Virus record (IMG/VR): IMGVR_UViG_3300033143_006101
Span: 124,001 to 188,000 of that record
Reading direction: 5' to 3' (one strand)
Length of the DNA: 64,000 bases
Positions 1,916 through 49,465 of the stretch are shown here, one piece after another. The translations under genes and the position numbers were made by a program. Position 1 is the first letter of the stretch, and each line of letters starts with the position of its first letter. A model generated the notes under the pieces. That model did no database searches. It was not told where the DNA came from and was given only the letters and a program-made list of their open reading frames with translations.

Positions 1916-2452
1916 ATGGTAAAAGGAACTAAAACACTTCTCGCCAGAAGAGAAGGTAAAGATTATTTCTTTACATATCTTGTAGAAGATCAAGATGAAA
2001 ATAGTTTGTATGTTCGTGCTTATCCTATAGGCGGTGGACATGAGTTTAAAATTCCCCGCAAAGATATTGTATCTATGGATGCTGTTGTACCAAGAACAAT
2101 AAGAAAGAAGAAAGTAGGATTTGACGAATCTCAATGGGGAATATATGATGCATATGTATTCGATAACAATTATTGGAATGGTTGGTTGCAGCCATTTTTA
2201 GAAAGAGAAGCAGTTAAACAATTTGTTGATGAACAAAATAAATTGGATGAAGATTACACAGACCTTGCATACCGATTTGAAAACAATGTATTATATATTA
2301 ACTATAAAGAGTACGACCAGAGCGAAGAAATAGAAGCTACTACTATTGAGTATGAAGATAAGGAAATCAAAGTATGGGATGTTTCTTTAGGACTATGCTG
2401 GATTGAATGGACCGATGAAGAGTTAGAAAATGAAGGGGGAGAAGATGTATAA
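1916..2452 (+). CDS. hypothetical protein
   Basis: ORF with AGGAGG RBS; 'YWNGWLQP' motif. Confidence 0.7.
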   Translation: MVKGTKTLLARREGKDYFFTYLVEDQDENSLYVRAYPIGGGHEFKIPRKDIVSMDAVVPRTIRKKKVGFDESQWGIYDAYVFDNNYWNGWLQPFLEREAVKQFVDEQNKLDEDYTDLAYRFENNVLYINYKEYDQSEEIEATTIEYEDKEIKVWDVSLGLCWIEWTDEELENEGGEDV

Positions 2453-3209
2453 TTTCCTTGATTTATTCTCTGGTATAGGTGCATTCCCTCTCGGTGCTCA
2501 TTGGGCAGGCATAACTTGGAAGACACATTTCAATTCTGATATTGAATCATATGCTAATGAAATATATCAGAAACGATTTCCTGACAGTATTAATATAGGA
2601 GATATAAAGCAAGCAAACATCAGAGATCTTTTACGAATAACTGGAGATTGGGTTGTTGTTGGTGGCCCTCCCTGTCCTGCTTTTAGTGTAGCAGGAAAAG
2701 GAGGAGGATTTGACCAAGATGATTTATTCTTTGACATGTTCAAAGTATGTGAAAAGATACAACCCAAGATAATTTTAATTGAGAATGTAGAAGGATTTAC
2801 AAAGTGGAAGGAGGTATTACATAATGAGATCGAAGCTATTGGATACGAGTGGGCGGACGCCATCATTGATGCAAGGGATTTTGGAATCCCTCAAGCAAGA
2901 AGAAGGTACTTTGCAATCTGTATTCGACGAGGAAACTTGTCTGGTACACAACATATATGGAGGGTTCAAGGAGAAGAAAGTAAGAGTATTCATGGATTAC
3001 TCTCCAACTTTACGAACTCCGAAAGGCGGTGGACACCTACCATCAAAACTAAAGACGGATGGAGAGATGTCTTCGCTAACGCCAGAAGAGTGCGAGCAAA
3101 TACAAGGACTCCCCATAGGATGGACCGACTCAGATGCATAGGTAATTCAATACCACCTCAGATGACAGGTGTAATATTTCTATATTTAAAACTTAAAGGA
3201 TTTTTATAG
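2445..3209 (+). CDS. C5 cytosine DNA methyltransferase, alpha subunit (motifs I-VIII and X)
   Basis: DLFSGIG (I), GPPCPAFS (IV), ENVEG (VI), PQARRR (VIII), RLRCIGNSIPP (X); motif IX absent in this frame. Confidence 0.9.
   Translation: MYNFLDLFSGIGAFPLGAHWAGITWKTHFNSDIESYANEIYQKRFPDSINIGDIKQANIRDLLRITGDWVVVGGPPCPAFSVAGKGGGFDQDDLFFDMFKVCEKIQPKIILIENVEGFTKWKEVLHNEIEAIGYEWADAIIDARDFGIPQARRRYFAICIRRGNLSGTQHIWRVQGEESKSIHGLLSNFTNSERRWTPTIKTKDGWRDVFANARRVRANTRTPHRMDRLRCIGNSIPPQMTGVIFLYLKLKGFL
2824..3141 (+). CDS. C5 methyltransferase beta subunit, nested in alternative frame (motif IX)
   Basis: SPTLRT (TRD TL-like) and LTPEECEQIQGLPIGWTD (motif IX); own RBS AAGGAGG at ~2808. Confidence 0.75.
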   Translation: MRSKLLDTSGRTPSLMQGILESLKQEEGTLQSVFDEETCLVHNIYGGFKEKKVRVFMDYSPTLRTPKGGGHLPSKLKTDGEMSSLTPEECEQIQGLPIGWTDSDA

Positions 3210-3256
3210 AAATGCTCTAGCCCGTTTGGGTTAGAGTATCTTTATAAGGAGGTATT

Positions 3257-3484
3257 ATGAGTTCTAAAATAGACAAGGAGAGGACCCAAGAGAGGGTATC
3301 GAACCTTAGATTAAGTATTCTTGATCAAGCAACCATTATACAATTACCTAAAAAATATAAAGTGGAACTATATAAGCATTCCCCCATTGCTTTTATTACT
3401 AATAAGGAAAATGGGAAAAGAACGGTAGTTCCTGTAGTTTCATTAAAGGATGTTAAACGAGCACTGTTAGAATTAGATGTGTAA
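3257..3484 (+). CDS. hypothetical protein
   Basis: ORF with AAGGAGG RBS. Confidence 0.65.
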   Translation: MSSKIDKERTQERVSNLRLSILDQATIIQLPKKYKVELYKHSPIAFITNKENGKRTVVPVVSLKDVKRALLELDV

Positions 3485-3541
3485 AATTAGTGTTGGATCC
3501 ATAACAGGTCCAGCACCAATTTTATTAGGAGGTGTAACTAA

Positions 3542-4420
3542 ATGTTATTAACTAATAGTTACTTTTCAGGTGCGGGATTATTTGAGATAGGACTCCAGCA
3601 AGGAGGACTAGCACTCCAGCAAAGCTTTGAACTTGATGAGAAGTGCTGCAATACCCACAAGCATAATTTTAATCATGCAGTAGTACAATCAGATATTACA
3701 CAGAAGTTAGCATCAGAGGAGAAAGAGTGTGATGTAATGGTTGCAACTTATCCTTGTAATAAATATTCACCCATTGCTGATATACATGGGGCACGTACCG
3801 GAGACGATTTGTTTCTACATTTCTTCAGGCATATAGCTTTGAAGAAGCCTGAGATTTATGTTGTAGAGAATGTACCCGGGATGAAAAAGTTTCCAGTAGT
3901 TATGGAAGCAATGACTAAACTACCTGATTATTATGTATCAGTATTCTGCCCAGTTGAAACCGAAAATTGGTTACCACAACGCAGGAAGAGATTGATACTG
4001 ATTGGTTCAAGACAGCACTTTCAATGGAGAGAACCAGAACAAGAAAAGAGAATTAAGCTAAAGGATATCTTAGAAGAGAATCCAGAAGTTAATATAGTCA
4101 AAGCTATTGGACAGAGAATGTCCGGTAAATATAGGGACATGCCTATCATTAGTGATCCTAAGAAGGATGATATAGCTCCCACTTGTGTAGCTCATTACTC
4201 TAAAGATTTATCTACTCGTCTTGTGAAAGATGATAGATATGAGTATGGAGTAAGACCATACAGTGTACGTGAGTACGCGAGATTGCAAGGAGTTCCTGAT
4301 TGGTTTGAGTTTACTGGAACAGCAGTCCAGAACTACAAAATGATTGGCAATGGAGTTCCCGTACCTATAGGCGAATGGGTAGCCAGAGAGTTACTCAGAT
4401 ACAAAAAACATAAGATGTAA
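3542..4420 (+). CDS. C5 cytosine DNA methyltransferase (single chain)
   Basis: SYFSGAG, YPCNKYS, ENVPG, PQRRKR, SVREYARLQGVP, IGNGVP. Confidence 0.92.
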   Translation: MLLTNSYFSGAGLFEIGLQQGGLALQQSFELDEKCCNTHKHNFNHAVVQSDITQKLASEEKECDVMVATYPCNKYSPIADIHGARTGDDLFLHFFRHIALKKPEIYVVENVPGMKKFPVVMEAMTKLPDYYVSVFCPVETENWLPQRRKRLILIGSRQHFQWREPEQEKRIKLKDILEENPEVNIVKAIGQRMSGKYRDMPIISDPKKDDIAPTCVAHYSKDLSTRLVKDDRYEYGVRPYSVREYARLQGVPDWFEFTGTAVQNYKMIGNGVPVPIGEWVARELLRYKKHKM

Positions 4421-42964: not shown

Positions 42965-44617
42965 TTATTTTAATTTTATAGACTCATACCACCGTGGGAG
43001 TTCAAGAAGAGGAGTACCCATAATGTCATCAATTATAGACATTGCTCCCCTCATAGCATCCCGTACTGCTTGAGCTACTAAAGCACTTTCAGTTAATGTA
43101 TTAGGATCCACTCTACTAACAGGTATTCCTACAGCTTCGAGAGAATCAGATAGCCTTTCTCTACGAGTAGTAATTGTTCCTGGTGGAAACATTATTACCA
43201 CTGCAGCTTTAGGGCGACCAAGCCCCTTCTCATCACAGTTTTCAACTATTTGTCTGATAACACCAGTATTGTGATCTTCATCTGTAAGATAAATATCAAT
43301 TTCACAATTTAATTTACGAGCATCTTCATACCATGACAAACAATTTGTTCCATGACCACCACAATGAATACCATACAACCTTGCCATGAATGCATCCTTT
43401 TCAAATGTTTCAGGTAGATCTAACTCCCTCTTATCATCATCAAATAATCCCCAATGAAAATTCTCTTCTGGATTCTTAATGCATTCTGCTATAATAGAAC
43501 CACGTTCCTTAGCAAAGTTAATTGCATGCATCATAGAAGGGCTTGCATCTATATGAACAAACACTTTACCAAGATCACCTACAATTTCTTTTCTTTTGTC
43601 AGCACGAGCTTTCTTAAGTTCTTTACTAACATCTGCATCTACTTCAGTAGTAATTTTATCTACACGATCTAAAGCAGTCTTAGCAGTTTTAATCTTCTCT
43701 GTAAAGACTTCCATTATTTCCTTATCTTTAAGCAAACCTTCTTTATCAAAAAGTTCACGATAAATAACTGCTTGATCACCACTACATTGTTCAAGTACTG
43801 CAGCTGCAATAACTGGCGATATCTTTTTATTCAAAGCACCCAGTACACCCTGAGGTTTTAACTTCTCCTCACGGATCTTTTCTGCTATTGCAAGATCACT
43901 AAGCCCCTTGAAATTAAAGATTTCACTTTTCTCCGCAACTCTTCCGTCCTTTTGATCCCATCCAAACACAGCAACGGCTTCATCAGAAGGAGCTATATGC
44001 AAAGCCCTATACATATTCAACATAATCTTAGTAAAAGCTGCTTTTTTAATTCCTTCCAAAGCTTTTGGATTCTGTTCACGAAAACGAATATACTTCTTAC
44101 ATGCATTTTTAAGACTACGAGCGAAGTGTGTACCTTCTTTATACCTTGCACCAAGTGGCATCTTGAGATTTGCTATCGTAATCAAACGAGACACTAACTT
44201 TGGATCCATAGTTAATACAGCAGCCTGGGCAACTCTACGATAATTAGGTTTTTTATAATCACTGCCTTCTGAGAAAGGTGTACCATCTGCATCACTCAAA
44301 GAATTGATAAATGTAGATAGAACTTTTAAATCCTTTCCATCAGATTTAGTTATAGCCCAGCTGTTAAAATGAGCTAAAAAGACAGGATCTTGATCAGCAA
44401 GAGTTATAAAAGTATCAAGTATAGGTTGTAACCTTTGCTCTTGTACTTCAGGCACTTCTGTTATAGTCCCATCTGGATTACGCCGTTTTCTCATAATAGT
44501 CTGTCCATTCTGCAGGGTGTTCTTAGACCATACATGTGTACATCCACTGATAATTGTTTTATAAACATCTAAACGAGTTTCGTCGTTCAGATAAGCGAGT
44601 TGATTCTCTTGTGCCAT
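42965..44617 (-). CDS. Ro60/Rsr-like TROVE-vWA RNA-binding protein
   Basis: helical N-terminus with 'DPVFLAH', 'RSLKNA', 'RALHIAP'; C-terminal vWA MIDAS DASPS...T...TD; Y-RNA-like gene directly upstream. Confidence 0.7.
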   Translation of the reverse strand: MAQENQLAYLNDETRLDVYKTIISGCTHVWSKNTLQNGQTIMRKRRNPDGTITEVPEVQEQRLQPILDTFITLADQDPVFLAHFNSWAITKSDGKDLKVLSTFINSLSDADGTPFSEGSDYKKPNYRRVAQAAVLTMDPKLVSRLITIANLKMPLGARYKEGTHFARSLKNACKKYIRFREQNPKALEGIKKAAFTKIMLNMYRALHIAPSDEAVAVFGWDQKDGRVAEKSEIFNFKGLSDLAIAEKIREEKLKPQGVLGALNKKISPVIAAAVLEQCSGDQAVIYRELFDKEGLLKDKEIMEVFTEKIKTAKTALDRVDKITTEVDADVSKELKKARADKRKEIVGDLGKVFVHIDASPSMMHAINFAKERGSIIAECIKNPEENFHWGLFDDDKRELDLPETFEKDAFMARLYGIHCGGHGTNCLSWYEDARKLNCEIDIYLTDEDHNTGVIRQIVENCDEKGLGRPKAAVVIMFPPGTITTRRERLSDSLEAVGIPVSRVDPNTLTESALVAQAVRDAMRGAMSIIDDIMGTPLLELPRWYESIKLK

Positions 44618-44645: not shown

Positions 44646-44780
44646 ATGGCAGTTCAAGTTGTAAAAATAGTTTTTTCAGTCCTCAAAACTGATGCTCTAC
44701 CCAACTGAGCTAATTACCGAATGGTTGGTAATGAGAGATTTGAACTCTCGGCTTGTATATTCTTACGATGGAACTGCCAT
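44646..44780 (-). ncRNA. Y RNA-like 1: bulged-C stem enclosing a circularly permuted tRNA (T arm, closed acceptor, D arm, anticodon arm)
   Basis: AUGGCAGUUC(C)A/UGAACUGCCAU; gagag-UUCAAAU-cucuc; auuacc-aaccauuc-gguaau; UAGCUCAGUUGGGUAGAGC; ucagu-uuugagg-acuga. Confidence 0.85.
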
Positions 44781-47260: not shown

Positions 47261-47945
47261 GGAAACTTCCTCCTTAATATTAAACATGTTATAATAATAA
47301 AAACAATTAATAACCCATAACCAATAAATGTATATAACATTGTTGGCTCAGCACTAGAAAATAAAATAAATACAATAGCTGCACCTAAAATAGAACCATA
47401 AAAAAACAATCCAATTATTTCAATTTTTCTCATAGCCATTATTGAAATCATCTTGTATCTCTCTTATTTCTTTACCTAATCCTTTCATGAAGGATCCACC
47501 ACCAGATTTAGAAATTGTAGTGCATCCTTTAGTAAGCATTGAAATTATTACAACATAGCATAATATAATTAAAATCATACCTGCTAATGCAAAACCCTAT
47601 AATTTTATTCATTTTTCTTCAATCTCCTCCACATGGTTCCATTTAACCAAAACAAGATCAAAAAATTTATCACGTTCTTCTTCTGTATGAAAAACACAGT
47701 CGATCAAATCACGAACACGACATATAGGTTTGCCCCTTTGCCTGATAGCAACATCATCACATGAAAACCATACCGCAGGGGGTTTTTCTTCCTTCGATAT
47801 GCTTGATGAGTCTAACCAAACGGAAACGCCTTTTAGAATTGATTCGGTATTAGGTAAGATCTTATCCAGATCTATAGCTCAATTAAGACATTCTACAATA
47901 TGCATCTCCAAGTAACCTCAAACTAATACAACTATTTATTTTTTA

Positions 47946-48087
47946 ACAGTAGTTCAAGTTGGTATATTTAAGCTGGATCAGTGGTAAGCCCGTATAACCC
48001 CAGGCCCCTGGGCTTTTAGTCCTTGCGAGACTACGTTGCTATAAACAACGCTTTTGTGCTTGTAAAATATACCTGTGGAACTACTGC
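47946..48087 (-). ncRNA. Y RNA-like 2: bulged-C stem enclosing a three-hairpin non-tRNA domain
   Basis: GCAGUAGUUC(C)A/UGAACUACUGU; ggUAUAUUU/AAAUAUAcc; UACAAGC motif. Confidence 0.75.
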
Positions 48088-48099
48088 AAATTTTCATTT

Positions 48100-48153
48100 C
48101 TAACTGTCCTAATAGGGAGGTCACGGAGGTCCTACAATAATTAGGACAGTTAG
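48100..48153 (-). ncRNA. hairpin RNA with 14-bp stem and two GACCUCC motifs in loop
   Basis: cuaacuguccuaau/auuaggacaguuag, located between Y2 and Y3. Confidence 0.45.
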
Positions 48154-48156
48154 AGT

Positions 48157-48232
48157 ATAGGGAGTCCAAGTTTATATTACACGTCAAGTAACCCGAAGAT
48201 AACTTGTAGGTAACATATATGAAACTCCCTAT
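48157..48232 (-). ncRNA. Y RNA-like 3: minimal 76-nt form
   Basis: AUAGGGAGUUU(C)A/UGGACUCCCUAU; UACAAG motif; AACUU 3' internal loop; abuts tRNA-Met 3' end. Confidence 0.7.
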
Positions 48233-48308
48233 TTGCAGGAGAGAGATTCGAACTCCCGTATGACCTTGGTTATGAGCCAAGCGACCTAGCCAGCTGGTCT
48301 ATCCTGCA
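48233..48308 (-). tRNA. tRNA with CAT anticodon (Met, or Ile2)
   Basis: TGCAGGA/TCCTGCA acceptor, cttgg-CTCATAA-ccaag, GTTCGAATC T-loop; CCA not encoded. Confidence 0.88.
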
Positions 48309-48596
48309 TTATTCCTTATTCCTTTTCTTCTTCCTTTTCTCTGCTTCTGAATCTGGCATTGCATCATGACATTTCTTACAATATACATCACACTTCTTAA
48401 TCTCTCTCAAAAATCTGTCAGGTGCCCAAGACCATATTCTATGATCTACTTTTTTACCAGGTTCTCTATGGTGAAGAGAAAGATTTTTTGTTGTGCCACA
48501 TCCTTTGCACTTCTTACCTTTATAAAACCTTTCCCTTCTTTTACGTAACCATTCTTTTTGATAGCTTTTTAAATCTTCCTTGTCTTTGTAGGGCAT
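48309..48596 (-). CDS. small HNH endonuclease
   Basis: CKGCG..NLSLHH...KCDVYCKKCH; inserted within the RNA cluster. Confidence 0.8.
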   Translation of the reverse strand: MPYKDKEDLKSYQKEWLRKRRERFYKGKKCKGCGTTKNLSLHHREPGKKVDHRIWSWAPDRFLREIKKCDVYCKKCHDAMPDSEAEKRKKKRNKE

Positions 48597-48603
48597 TAGT
48601 TTA

Positions 48604-48804
48604 TTAAGTCACACGAACCGCTACTGCTCGTGGTCCTTTATCTCCTTGCTCAGTATCAAATTCCACTGCATCTCCTTCATTTAATGTTTTAAATCCAGTA
48701 CCTTCAATACTACTATGATGTACAAAAATATCATTTCCATCATCATCTGTAATAAAACCAAAACCTTTTTTCTCGTTAAACCATTTTACTTTACCTTGCG
48801 ACAT
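48604..48804 (-). CDS. cspA: cold-shock domain protein
   Basis: [34 protein letters not shown]. Confidence 0.95.
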
Positions 48805-48853
48805 ATTTTTACCTCTATTGCTTAAATTCAACCCGTTGAATCCAACTGGTTAT

Positions 48854-48989
48854 TCGGGGAAGAAGGAGTTGAACCTTCGACATTCAGTTTCCAAATGCTT
48901 GTAAGATAATATTATGGGAACCTAAAAGGTTCAAGTTATACCATCTAGAAAACAACACACTGAGACTCTACCTACTGAGCTATTCCCCG
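48854..48989 (-). ncRNA. Y RNA-like 4: tRNA-Pro-like body with 63-nt Y module inserted in the anticodon loop
   Basis: CGGGGAA/UUCCCCG-A acceptor, D and T arms intact; insert 48896-48958 contains AACUUGAACC-uuuu-aGGUUCC and UACAAGC; UUUGGAA precedes the 3' anticodon strand. Confidence 0.8.
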
Positions 48990-48997
48990 TTTATTTT

Positions 48998-49128
48998 AAA
49001 GGAGTTCAAGTAATAGTTGCAATTAGTTTGCAAGTGAAAGATTTGAACTTTCGACCTAAAGTTTAATAGACTTTTGCTCTACCAACTGAGCTAATTTGCT
49101 TGTAAGCAACTATATAGGAAACTCCTTT
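48998..49128 (-). ncRNA. Y RNA-like 5: Y stem enclosing a complete unpermuted tRNA-like cloverleaf (49028-49100, anticodon ATT)
   Basis: AAAGGAGUUUCC/UGAACUCCUUU; auaguugc/gcaacuau; UAGCUCAGUUGGUAGAGC; aaagu-CUAUUAA-acuuu; gaaag-UUCAAAU-cuuuc. Confidence 0.8.
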
Positions 49129-49154
49129 AATTTTCCTTAAAAATATAAAATTAA

Positions 49155-49356: not shown

Positions 49357-49385
49357 AATATAATCAAGATACATAATATTGTCAA
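49357..49385 (-). promoter_or_regulatory. sigma70-type promoter heading the RHH / Y RNA / cspA unit
   Basis: TTGACA-17 bp-TATATT. Confidence 0.75.
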
Positions 49386-49415
49386 CAATTTTTTTAAAAA
49401 AATTACTAAAAGTGA

Positions 49416-49457
49416 TCCTGGGTAGTATATATATATATATATATATACTACCCAGGA
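49416..49457. repeat. perfect 42-bp palindrome with (TA)11 core
   Basis: tcctgggtag-(ta)11-ctacccagga. Confidence 0.9.
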
Positions 49458-49465
49458 CAACATTT

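What the first reader, a model, noticed from the sequence alone, without database searches (positions are those of the whole stretch)
48998..49128. Y5: complete unpermuted tRNA cloverleaf clamped inside a Y stem
Seen: a 73-nt cloverleaf (49028-49100) with anticodon loop CUAUUAA, one change from the tRNA-Asn loop CUGUUAA, and two acceptor mismatches. Its leader and trailer pair with each other to form the Y module. tRNA scanners would probably call only a pseudo-tRNA. Inference: a caged tRNA whose ends are blocked until processing, or an intermediate showing how Y RNAs arise by capture of a tRNA gene.
Basis: partly seen in the sequence, partly recalled or inferred. Interest (0 to 1): 0.75.

Follow-up and report, generated by a model that had tools for sequence, protein, structure and literature searches.

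The report
tRNA-shaped Y RNA of a phage
A jumbo phage encodes a 131-base RNA in which a complete tRNA cloverleaf is closed by a conserved two-part stem of the kind that docks on Ro60 proteins. It is one of more than 50 such RNAs found beside a divergent phage Ro60-like gene, so it is most likely a tRNA-mimicking Y RNA and not a working tRNA-Asn.

Summary
On the minus strand, 49100-49028 is a canonical 73-nt cloverleaf (Rfam tRNA 61.3 bits; ARAGORN "Asn, att") with anticodon loop CUAUUAA and two acceptor mismatches. Its leader and trailer form a 10-bp and an 8-bp stem.

The 550-aa gene 4.4 kb downstream has no Pfam TROVE hit but folds like Ro60/Rsr. The same stem motif (GUUyC ... UACAAGC ... 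ACUUGrAC) closes four other RNAs in the window.

A covariance model finds 53 full-length relatives beside Ro-like genes in metagenomic phages, all on the gene's strand. Both stems covary strongly (92% of cells paired against 59% in shuffles; G·U 59 against A·C 9).

- Scanners call it a good tRNA, not a pseudogene.
- It is not a recent capture. It is 77-84% identical to Y-embedded tRNAs of other phages but at most 65% identical to any tRNA of its own genome.

Across the family the anticodon is hypervariable (25 anticodons, including Leu and Ser anticodons on short-variable-loop bodies) and the acceptor helix ranges from 2 to 9 bp. This argues for mimicry and against decoding. A caged pre-tRNA remains a minority possibility, because CCA follows the acceptor in about 40% of relatives.

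I rate it a new variant of a known kind.

The parts
49119..49128 (-). Stem a, 5' strand (AAAGGAGUUU). It pairs with 48998-49007.
   Evidence: Sequence; minimum-free-energy fold; family helix 1 is 92.5% paired, and 10 of 10 pairs show changes on both sides.
49114..49118 (-). 5' side of the internal loop between stems a and b (CCUAU). The first C is nearly invariant in the family and is a bulged-C-like position.
   Evidence: Column 12 entropy is 0.14 bits across 53 sequences.
49106..49113 (-). Stem b, 5' strand (AUAGUUGC). It pairs with 49013-49020.
   Evidence: family helix 2 is 88.3% paired, and 8 of 8 pairs show changes on both sides.
49101..49105 (-). UUACA linker. It is the first part of the UACAAGC motif that follows stem b in every Y-type RNA of this family, whatever the interior.
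   Evidence: columns 31-33 (ACA) have entropy of 0.14 bits or less.
49028..49100 (-). Complete class-I tRNA cloverleaf, 73 nt. Acceptor 5' strand 49100-49094; D arm 49091-49076; anticodon arm 49074-49058 with anticodon AUU at 49067-49065; variable loop 49057-49053; T arm 49052-49036; acceptor 3' strand 49035-49029; discriminator A at 49028.
   Evidence: Rfam RF00005 at 61.3 bits; ARAGORN Asn(att); D, anticodon and T helices are 97-99.5% paired in the family.
49021..49027 (-). 3' linker (ACUAAUU), unpaired. The nearest relatives have CCA starting one base after the discriminator-equivalent position (e.g. GCA-UCCA-AAUU); Y5 has none.
49013..49020 (-). Stem b, 3' strand (GCAACUAU).
49008..49012 (-). 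3' side of the internal loop (UACUU). It contains the conserved ACUU that, with the following GAAC, makes the ACUUGrAC signature. The Rfam YrlA consensus has a similar 3' strand (cUuGucG).
   Evidence: Columns 164-166 have entropy 0.14-0.67 bits; the YrlA consensus is printed.
48998..49007 (-). Stem a, 3' strand (GAACUCCUUU). Y5 ends 8 nt before the 5' end of the next tRNA-like element (Y4, 48989-48854).
42965..44617 (-). Divergent Ro60/Rsr-like protein (550 aa), the presumed protein partner of the Y stem.
   Evidence: No Pfam hit. The family profile matches human RO60 at E = 3.4e-6, and 13 of 45 members hit PF25045 vWA_Ro60. The AlphaFold model has pLDDT 86, and its top 13 Foldseek PDB matches are all Ro60/TROVE/Rsr over 513-605 columns.
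44646..44780 (-). Y1: the same Y stem closing a circularly permuted tRNA (T arm, closed acceptor hairpin, D arm, anticodon arm), directly upstream of the Ro-like gene.
   Evidence: Rfam YrlA at 29.1 bits, below the gathering score of 69.
47946..48087 (-). Y2: the same Y stem with a non-tRNA interior.
48158..48231 (-). Y3: a minimal Y hairpin that abuts the 3' end of tRNA-Met (48308-48233).
48854..48989 (-). Y4: a tRNA-like element with open acceptor ends. Its anticodon loop is replaced by a closed version of the Y stem (ACUUGAACC-UUUU-AGGUUCC...UUACAAGCA).
   Evidence: Rfam tRNA at 49 bits with a 68-nt insert; fold; motif scan.

Best explanation
Y5 is a Y-like non-coding RNA belonging to a divergent phage Ro60 system. 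It is a roughly 131-nt transcript segment. Its 5' and 3' ends form a bipartite stem: stem a of 10 bp, a conserved C / ACUU internal loop, and stem b of 8 bp, followed by the family motif UACAAGC. This stem is the docking module for the Ro60-like ring encoded 4.4 kb downstream on the same strand (inferred). The stem closes, across a 5 x 7-nt internal loop, onto the acceptor helix of a complete L-shaped tRNA body. That body is the effector module (inferred). It presents a tRNA-like elbow and anticodon arm to a tRNA-binding partner, such as a host exoribonuclease like PNPase (as in Ro60-Y RNA-PNPase complexes), RNase P, or tRNA-modifying or tRNA-targeting enzymes. It most likely does not decode AAU codons. 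Shown: the cloverleaf, both stems and their covariation, the shared motifs, the genomic association with the gene and the shared strand, and the Ro60-like fold of the protein. Inferred: Ro binding, stability of the 131-nt form, and the identity of the partner. The 3' end is probably made by RNase P cutting at the 5' end of the adjacent Y4 element (inferred). The RNA lies downstream of a promoter-like site and a small ORF, so its 5' end probably needs an endonuclease cut (inferred).
For: tRNA and stems.

Shared stem motif: the same motif occurs in five RNAs within 4.5 kb, all co-oriented with the Ro-like gene.

Ro60-like fold of the 550-aa protein.

Family size: model R1 finds 53 full-length homologues (68-134 bits) in 39 sources, all on the strand of the Ro-like gene.

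Covariation: 91.7% of cells are paired against 59.4% in shuffles. The covariation score is 0.80 against 0.21 (0 of 500 shuffles reach it), and slid partners give 30-41% paired. Every pair of stems a and b has changes on both sides.

RNA-level pairing: G.U 59 against A.C 9 in stems a and b shows pairing on this strand and not a DNA-level inverted repeat.

Against a decoding role:
- 25 different anticodons occur on near-identical bodies, with entropy of 1.8-1.9 bits at positions 34-36.
- Leu and Ser anticodons sit on bodies with 4-5-nt variable loops.
- The acceptor helix ranges from 2 to 9 bp, and pair 1-72 is formed in only 36% of sequences.
- Y5 has 5 of 7 acceptor pairs, whereas most of the genome's other tRNAs have 7 of 7.
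- The genome already has a canonical tRNA-Asn(GUU) with discriminator G, while Y5 has A34 and A73. From established knowledge of E. coli AsnRS identity (G34, U35, U36, G73), Y5 would be a poor substrate.

Precedent: bacterial Y RNAs carry tRNA-like domains, and D. radiodurans Yrn1 has the D, anticodon, T order inside the Y stem (PMC4201824). A phage Ro60 binds phage Y-like RNAs and host PNPase (PMC12135203).
Against: No expression, end-mapping or binding data exist.

Neither Rfam's YrlA model nor its Y_RNA model matches Y5.

The protein has no Pfam TROVE hit, and its TM-scores to Ro60 structures are only 0.45-0.5.

The loci were found through the Ro-like gene, so the RNA-gene association is not independently tested. 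Of five pattern-derived contigs with Y5-type matches, only one held a Ro-like gene; the other four are partial contigs, CheckV 9-67% complete.

Features that a pure structural mimic would not obviously need:
- the anticodon loop keeps tRNA geometry (7 nt in 49 of 53, U33 in 42 of 49, purine 37 in 49 of 49);
- N-CCA follows the acceptor helix in 22 of 53 against 4.6 expected;
- acceptor pairs 2-7 covary;
- the loop CUAUUAA recurs in about five lineages.

AAU makes up 83% of Asn codons in the phage, so an AUU anticodon would match the commonest Asn codon.
Confidence: 0.6

Rival explanations
1. Caged pre-tRNA. Y5 is a precursor of a functional tRNA. The Y stem, with or without the Ro-like protein, holds leader and trailer together and delays or controls RNase P and 3' trimming. 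A 73-nt tRNA with anticodon AUU is released, receives CCA from the host, and reads the abundant AAU codon.
For: The core is fully canonical and scores higher than the window's genuine tRNA-Met (61.3 against 55.7 bits). Single-stranded linkers of 5 and 7 nt leave room for RNase P. Across the family, N-CCA is enriched after the acceptor (22 of 53 against 4.6) and some members have 7 of 7 acceptor pairs plus ACCA (L014, L088). None of the phage's free tRNAs encodes CCA, so its absence in Y5 is uninformative. AAU is 83% of Asn codons. M. smegmatis YrlA is cut by RNase P and receives CCA in vivo (PMC4201824).
Against: A34 next to U35 U36 is not a standard bacterial anticodon. Y5 has the A1.A72 and A6.C67 mismatches, and its A73 differs from the G73 of the phage's own tRNA-Asn. 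Close relatives with the same body carry CAU, GAU, AAU, UAU and other anticodons. Members with Leu or Ser anticodons lack the long variable arm. Many members have acceptor helices of only 2-4 bp and cannot be charged. In particular, most other members with the AUU loop have acceptors of 2-4 bp.
Confidence: 0.2
2. Decoy or sensor for tRNA-targeting factors. The Ro-like particle displays tRNA bodies with diversifying anticodon arms as baits for host anticodon nucleases or other tRNA-directed defence enzymes, and so protects the phage's 24 real tRNAs.
For: The anticodon is hypervariable while loop geometry is conserved. In five close pairs the anticodon differs at 4 of 15 positions against 6.4% elsewhere; L047 and L048 are identical except at anticodon position 35; L014 and L088 keep an identical Y stem but have a remodelled anticodon arm. 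Several Y-tRNA fusions occur per genome, and tandem arrays such as L049 exist.
Against: This is purely inferential. The sample of close pairs is tiny. Hypervariability is equally expected from relaxed constraint. No defence or counter-defence gene was identified nearby, and the phage has no RtcB, Rnl2-type ligase or CCA-adding enzyme by Pfam.
Confidence: 0.1
3. Ro-independent processing stalk. Stems a and b are an RNase III-type or other endonuclease site used to excise small RNAs from a polycistronic transcript, as leader-trailer stems do for rRNA. The neighbouring Ro-like gene is then incidental.
For: Y5 lies inside an apparent operon downstream of a promoter-like site and a small ORF, so excision is needed. 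About 18 bp of interrupted helix is near the size of an RNase III substrate.
Against: The invariant unpaired nucleotides (C bulge, ACUU, UACA) point to sequence-specific protein recognition and not to helix-only recognition. The 3' strand resembles the Rfam YrlA consensus. The motif also occurs as closed hairpins inside tRNA-like genes, where it cannot excise anything. It co-occurs with the Ro-like gene in dozens of loci.
Confidence: 0.07
4. Chance inverted repeat, DNA-level repeat or decaying pseudo-tRNA with no function.
For: The acceptor has two mismatches and the anticodon is odd.
Against: The fold has z = -4.2. There are 53 homologues with compensatory changes in every stem pair. G.U greatly outnumbers A.C, and all copies lie on one strand. 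Y5 keeps every tertiary-interaction nucleotide.
Confidence: 0.02

Closest known systems
Deinococcus radiodurans Yrn1 (bacterial Y RNA)
   Same: It is bound by a Ro60 orthologue. Its tRNA-like elements run in the normal 5'-to-3' order (D-like, anticodon-like arm, T arm), so the Y stem sits where the acceptor stem would be. Both strands of the Ro-binding helix are recognisable (PMC4201824).
   Different: Yrn1's mimicry is partial: there is no clear D arm, the 'anticodon' loop has 6 nt and there is no variable region. Y5 is a complete cloverleaf with every tertiary-pair nucleotide, a 7-nt loop and its own acceptor helix in addition to the Y stem. Y5 also has the UACAAGC motif, and its protein partner is far more divergent.
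YrlA (Rfam RF02553; Salmonella, Mycobacterium and mycobacteriophage Y RNAs)
   Same: It is a Y RNA encoded beside Ro60/Rsr with a tRNA-like domain (T arm, acceptor-like stem, D arm). Its 3' strand (cUuG...) resembles ACUUGrAC. M. smegmatis YrlA is cleaved by RNase P and receives CCA. Y1 in this window has this architecture.
   Different: YrlA is circularly permuted (T arm before D arm, acceptor closed by a loop) and has the GNCGAA 5' motif. Y5 is unpermuted, has an open acceptor end tied into the Y stem, has a full anticodon arm, and gives no RF02553 match.
Thermus phage phiLo Ro60 with Yrl1/Yrl2
   Same: It is a phage-encoded Ro60 ring with phage-encoded Y-like RNAs located upstream of the gene. 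It forms complexes with host PNPase (PMC12135203). Its structure is among the best fold matches to the window's protein (9kop, 9l5y).
   Different: Yrl1 and Yrl2 are described as stem-bulge-stem RNAs with a CGAA motif, and no tRNA cloverleaf is reported. The protein is only 14-15% identical in the structural alignment.
Ordinary phage tRNA genes
   Same: It has a cloverleaf and a high tRNA model score, and ARAGORN calls it a tRNA. It lies in a genome with 24 other tRNAs.
   Different: It has a conserved 18-bp leader-trailer stem with protein-recognition-like motifs, a non-standard A34 anticodon and a mismatched acceptor. It sits in the Ro/Y cluster and not in the terminal tRNA arrays.

Membership tests
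Y RNA (Ro60-associated ncRNA, broad sense) | Encoded near, and co-oriented with, a Ro60/Rsr orthologue | tested here: met
   A gene with a Ro60-like fold lies at 42965-44617(-), 4.4 kb downstream on the same strand. All 53 homologues lie on the gene's strand. Caveat: the loci were ascertained through the gene.
Y RNA (Ro60-associated ncRNA, broad sense) | The 5' and 3' ends pair into a long stem interrupted by a conserved bulge or internal loop (the Ro-binding helix) | tested here: met
   Stems a and b have an invariant C / ACUU loop and show covariation in 18 of 18 pairs.
Y RNA (Ro60-associated ncRNA, broad sense) | Physical binding to Ro60 | not testable with these tools
   Needs RIP or EMSA.
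YrlA (Rfam RF02553) | Match to the covariance model at or above the gathering score (69 bits) | tested here: not met
   Y5 has no match at E <= 10. Neighbour Y1 reaches only 29.1 bits.
YrlA (Rfam RF02553) | Permuted tRNA-like domain: T arm, closed acceptor-like stem-loop, then D arm | tested here: not met
   The order in Y5 is acceptor, D, anticodon, T, acceptor.
Metazoan-type Y_RNA (Rfam RF00019) | Match to the covariance model | tested here: not met
   No match was listed at E <= 10 in 47930-49140. The similarity of ACUUGAAC to the metazoan CUUGAC strand is recalled from memory only.
tRNA (RF00005) | Cloverleaf with conserved D- and T-loop nucleotides, above the gathering score | tested here: met
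   61.3 bits against a gathering score of 29; ARAGORN call.
tRNA (functional decoder) | Seven standard acceptor pairs and an anticodon of the normal bacterial set that fits the body's identity elements | tested here: not met
   5 of 7 pairs; anticodon AUU with A73, whereas the genome's own tRNA-Asn has GUU and G73. Relatives carry 25 different anticodons on the same body.
tRNA (functional decoder) | Processing to a mature size, CCA end, aminoacylation | not testable with these tools
   No transcript data. CCA is not encoded, but no tRNA of this genome encodes it either.
Ro60/TROVE protein family (for the partner gene) | Pfam TROVE (PF05731) match | tested here: not met
   No match in the whole 252,876-bp genome or in the protein.
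Ro60/TROVE protein family (for the partner gene) | HEAT-repeat ring plus C-terminal vWA domain with a MIDAS motif | tested here: met
   Full-length Foldseek matches to 13 Ro60/Rsr/TROVE chains at E 1e-8 to 4e-6. D357, S359, S361, T424 and D446 are invariant. vWA_Ro60 is hit in 13 of 45 members.

The most novel reading that the evidence does not exclude
The phage Ro60-like particle carries a set of tRNA bodies joined to one docking stem in several topologies: at the acceptor end (Y5), in the anticodon loop (Y4), in the variable arm, and permuted (Y1). Their hypervariable but correctly shaped anticodon arms would serve as baits or sensors for host tRNA-targeting defence nucleases. Y5-type RNAs would then be counter-defence decoys and neither Y-RNA tethers in the classical sense nor tRNAs.
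Probability: 0.1. Interest if true: 0.85.

Novelty: new variant of a known kind. Interest (0 to 1): 0.6.

Why it matters
Y RNAs with tRNA-like domains and phage Ro60 homologues are both known. A Y RNA that contains a whole, unpermuted, scanner-positive tRNA with its own acceptor helix was not described in any paper I could find.

Here it is not a one-off. It defines a class of at least 50 covarying members tied to a large, previously unrecognised branch of Ro60-like proteins that Pfam TROVE misses.

It matters for three reasons:
- It gives the Y RNA field a natural series of topologies linking tRNAs and Y RNAs, which makes the long-suspected tRNA origin of Y RNAs, and the role of the tRNA-like domain, directly testable.
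- ARAGORN of the 53 as ordinary tRNA genes with odd anticodons. Phage tRNA inventories, and inferences about codon adaptation or suppressor tRNAs, may therefore be contaminated by such mimics.
- The conserved unpaired nucleotides (C bulge, ACUU, UACAAGC) are concrete targets for binding and structural studies.

Tried and rejected
- Close relatives of the region: blastn against GenBank phages found only cold-shock-gene and tRNA similarities. An exact-pattern scan of IMG/VR for the anticodon arm found nothing. A single-sequence scan for the Ro-like protein in IMG/VR found nothing. Only the profile-based scans worked.
- Pfam and PHROGs on ten neighbouring ORFs: these gave no hit for the Ro-like gene. 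A Pfam TROVE search of the whole genome gave none.
- Phage-encoded RNA-repair or tRNA-maturation enzymes as context: no RtcB, no CCA-adding/PolyA_pol head domain and no Rnl2-type ligase was found.
- Independent test of the RNA-gene association: the pattern TTACAAGC-N(2-8)-TAGCTCA was scanned in IMG/VR, and most hits were chance matches. Only five loci gave full-length R1 matches. One of their contigs holds a Ro-like gene; the others are partial contigs, CheckV 9-67% complete. The test is inconclusive.
- Absence of CCA in Y5 as an argument against function: rejected, because none of the genome's free tRNAs encodes CCA.
- DNA-level inverted repeat or mobile element: rejected on the G.U to A.C ratio and on strand bias.
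- Recent capture of the phage's own tRNA-Asn: rejected on identity.
- Two review papers on bacterial Y RNAs were not held in the library.
- My first regular-expression screens missed many members and admitted noise. The covariance model replaced them.

Full report
**Setting.** The window is bases 124001-188000 of a 252,876-bp IMG/VR phage record with direct terminal repeats. The genome is 33% G+C. Everything discussed here lies on the minus strand.

**1. The observation.**
- Rfam's tRNA model matches 49100-49028 at 61.3 bits (gathering score 29). It marks exactly two non-standard acceptor pairs.
- ARAGORN calls tRNA-Asn with anticodon att at the same coordinates.
- Read directly, the anticodon loop is CUAUUAA and the mismatches are A1.A72 and A6.C67.
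- All tertiary-interaction nucleotides are present: U8, A14, G15/C48, G18G19, U54U55C56 and A58.
- The flanks pair as stem a (49128-49119 with 49007-48998; 10 bp) and stem b (49113-49106 with 49020-49013; 8 bp).
- The 131-nt segment folds with both stems at -34.3 kcal/mol (z = -4.2; 0 of 200 shuffles as stable).
The available scanners call a good tRNA, not a pseudogene. The tRNA ends are separated from stem b by a 5 x 7-nt internal loop and are not clamped directly.

**2. Surroundings in the window.** The same stem design closes four other RNAs within 4.5 kb, all on the same strand:

| Element | Coordinates | Interior |
|---|---|---|
| Y1 | 44780-44646 | Circularly permuted tRNA; weak Rfam YrlA match, 29.1 bits |
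| Y2 | 48087-47946 | Non-tRNA interior |
| Y3 | 48231-48158 | Minimal hairpin abutting tRNA-Met |
| Y4 | 48989-48854 | tRNA-like element whose anticodon loop is replaced by a closed copy of the stem |

- The common design is: stem a 5' strand, GUUyC, stem b 5' strand, UACAAGC, interior, stem b 3' strand, (A)ACUUGrAC, stem a 3' strand.
- Y1 lies directly upstream of a 550-aa ORF (44617-42965). This ORF has no Pfam or PHROG hit, and the genome has no TROVE match at all.
- A profile of 45 homologues of the ORF nonetheless matches human RO60 (E = 3.4e-6). Thirteen of the 45 members hit PF25045 vWA_Ro60.
- Its AlphaFold model (pLDDT 86) has Ro60, Rsr or TROVE structures as its top 13 PDB matches. 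These include Thermus phage phiLo Ro60 and cover 513-605 aligned columns (E 1e-8 to 4e-6).

**3. Transcription context.**
- A promoter-like site (TTGACA/TATATT, 11 of 12 matches) lies at 49385-49357.
- It sits just downstream of a strong bidirectional terminator-like palindrome at 49415-49458.
- A small ORF follows the promoter-like site, then Y5, and Y4 begins 8 nt after Y5.
- Y5 is thus probably cut out of a longer transcript. RNase P acting at the 5' end of Y4 would create the 3' end of Y5. Both points are inference.

**4. Related sequences.**
- The Ro-like protein has more than 180 metagenomic homologues.
- Profile scans fetched 10 viral and 80 metagenomic loci.
- Y5-type elements were first seen by eye in L009, L014 and L015.
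- A covariance model built from eight of them finds 53 full-length matches (68-134 bits) in 39 sources. Every one lies on the strand of the Ro-like gene, often with several per locus.
- Two or three of the weakest matches (L081:53, L039:8703) look like ordinary tRNAs with chance flanks.

**5. Covariation.**

| Measure | Observed | Control |
|---|---|---|
| Cells forming a standard pair | 91.7% | 59.4% in shuffles; 30-41% with slid partners |
| Covariation score | 0.80 | 0.21 in shuffles (0 of 500 reach the observed value) |

- Stem a is 92.5% paired, and 10 of 10 pairs show changes on both sides.
- Stem b is 88.3% paired (8 of 8 pairs with such changes).
- Acceptor pairs 2-7 are 85.7% paired (6 of 6). 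The nominal 1-72 pair forms in only 35.6% of sequences.
- In stems a and b, G.U cells outnumber A.C cells 59 to 9. The pairing is therefore selected in RNA on this strand and not as a DNA inverted repeat.
- The alignment was fitted to the model, which favours the structure. The size of the effect and the slide control make an artefact unlikely.
- The nearly invariant unpaired positions are the first loop C, the ACA of UUACA, and the CU of ACUU (entropy 0.23 bits or less). These are the likely protein contacts.

**6. Decoder or mimic?**
- The loop keeps tRNA geometry: 7 nt in 49 of 53, U33 in 42 of 49, and a purine at position 37 in 49 of 49.
- Positions 34-36 are almost maximally variable (1.8-1.9 bits). 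There are 25 anticodons; CAU occurs 7 times, AUU 6 times and UAA 4 times.
- Leu and Ser anticodons sit on bodies with 4-5-nt variable loops.
- The acceptor helix ranges from 2 to 9 bp. Most other members with the AUU loop have helices of only 2-4 bp.
- Close pairs differ preferentially in the anticodon: 4 of 15 positions against 6.4% elsewhere. This rests on only five pairs.
- The phage has 24 other tRNAs in terminal arrays, including tRNA-Asn(GUU) with G73. Most have 7 of 7 acceptor pairs.
- Y5 has A34 and A73. From what is known of E. coli AsnRS identity, it should not be charged with Asn.

Three results point the other way:
- CCA follows the acceptor helix in 22 of 53 members, against 4.6 in shuffles.
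- Y5 lacks CCA, but no tRNA of this genome encodes it.
- AAU is 83% of Asn codons.

I therefore favour mimicry (0.6) over a caged functional pre-tRNA (0.2). I keep open that RNase P nicks some members, as it does M. smegmatis YrlA (PMC4201824).

**7. Origin.**
- The Y5 core is 77-84% identical to Y-embedded tRNAs of other phages, such as L028, L026 and L093.
- It is at most 65% identical to any tRNA of its own genome.
- The nearest free tRNA in any locus is a tRNA-Met at 73%.
- The "capture intermediate" idea is not supported. This is an old, inherited architecture, perhaps derived from a Met/Ile-like tRNA.

**8. Comparison with known systems.**
- Bacterial Y RNAs mimic tRNAs. Yrn1 of D. radiodurans has the same D, anticodon, T order inside the Y stem, but only partial mimicry. 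YrlA is permuted.
- Phage Ro60 homologues and phage Y-like RNAs are known.
- Y5 fails the Rfam YrlA and Y_RNA models, and its partner protein fails Pfam TROVE.
- I found no paper describing a complete unpermuted tRNA inside a Y stem.
- Verdict: a new variant of a known kind.

**9. Limits.**
- There are no expression or binding data.
- The RNA-gene association is subject to ascertainment bias, and my attempt to test it independently was inconclusive.
- tRNAscan-SE and R-scape were not available.

Noticed in passing
window 42965-44617 (-): This 550-aa protein has no Pfam TROVE or PHROG hit, but its predicted structure matches Ro60/Rsr over its full length. It has more than 180 metagenomic homologues, mostly on large phage-like contigs. 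It looks like an unrecognised branch of the Ro60 family.
   Followed up: partly
window 48854-48989 (-): Y4 is a tRNA-like element with open acceptor ends (Rfam tRNA 49 bits). Its anticodon loop is replaced by a 68-nt insert holding a closed copy of the Y stem (ACUUGAACC-UUUU-AGGUUCC...UUACAAGCA). This is the topological inverse of Y5, and it begins 8 nt after Y5.
   Followed up: partly
window 44646-44780 (-): Y1 has the same Y stem around a circularly permuted tRNA (T arm, closed acceptor hairpin, D arm, anticodon arm). It is the only element with a weak Rfam YrlA match (29.1 bits, gathering score 69). It lies directly upstream of the Ro-like gene.
   Followed up: partly
window 47946-48087 and 48158-48231 (-): Y2 has the same stem with a non-tRNA interior of three hairpins. 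Y3 is a minimal stem-loop that starts 2 nt after tRNA-Met(CAU) (48308-48233).
   Followed up: no
own genome 240.7-241.35 kb, outside the window (L002:1051-1188, 1410-1552, about 1553-1700, + strand): Three tRNA-like genes in the terminal tRNA array carry a closed Y hairpin in the position of a long variable arm. One (L002:1410-1552) matches Rfam tRNA at 53 bits and has the anticodon loop AUUGAAA. This is a fourth way of joining the Y module to a tRNA body.
   Followed up: partly
L049:115-1620 (+): A tandem array of about eight Y-type RNAs lies directly upstream of the Ro-like gene (2155-3711) in a metagenomic contig. Several other loci (L039, L025, L051, L094) also hold many copies interleaved with ordinary tRNAs.
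   Followed up: no
L047:12083-12209 and L048:12123-12249: Two Y5-type copies are identical at all other aligned positions and differ only at anticodon position 35 (UUA against UCA). Both anticodons are complementary to stop codons, and the acceptor helix is only 4 bp.
   Followed up: no
all loci: ARAGORN of the 53 Y-embedded tRNA modules as ordinary tRNA genes with assorted anticodons. tRNA counts, and inferred suppressor or rare-anticodon tRNAs, in such phages may therefore be inflated.
   Followed up: partly
window 49415-49458 and 49357-49385: A 20-bp palindrome with an (AT)n core looks like a bidirectional terminator. It is followed on the minus strand by a near-consensus promoter-like site (TTGACA, 17-nt spacer, TATATT) and a short ORF (about 49292-49151) ahead of Y5.
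   Followed up: no
window 48604-48831 and 48309-48596 (-): A cold-shock-domain protein gene (Pfam CSD, E = 3e-28) and an HNH endonuclease-like gene (PHROG 4234) sit between the Y RNAs. HNH-like genes also flank the Y clusters in L009 and L010.
   Followed up: no
family alignment A5, acceptor helix: A.C mismatches are unusually frequent in the acceptor-like helix (21 A.C against 15 G.U cells). This is the opposite of the pattern in every other helix. Y5's A6.C67 is one example.
   Followed up: no
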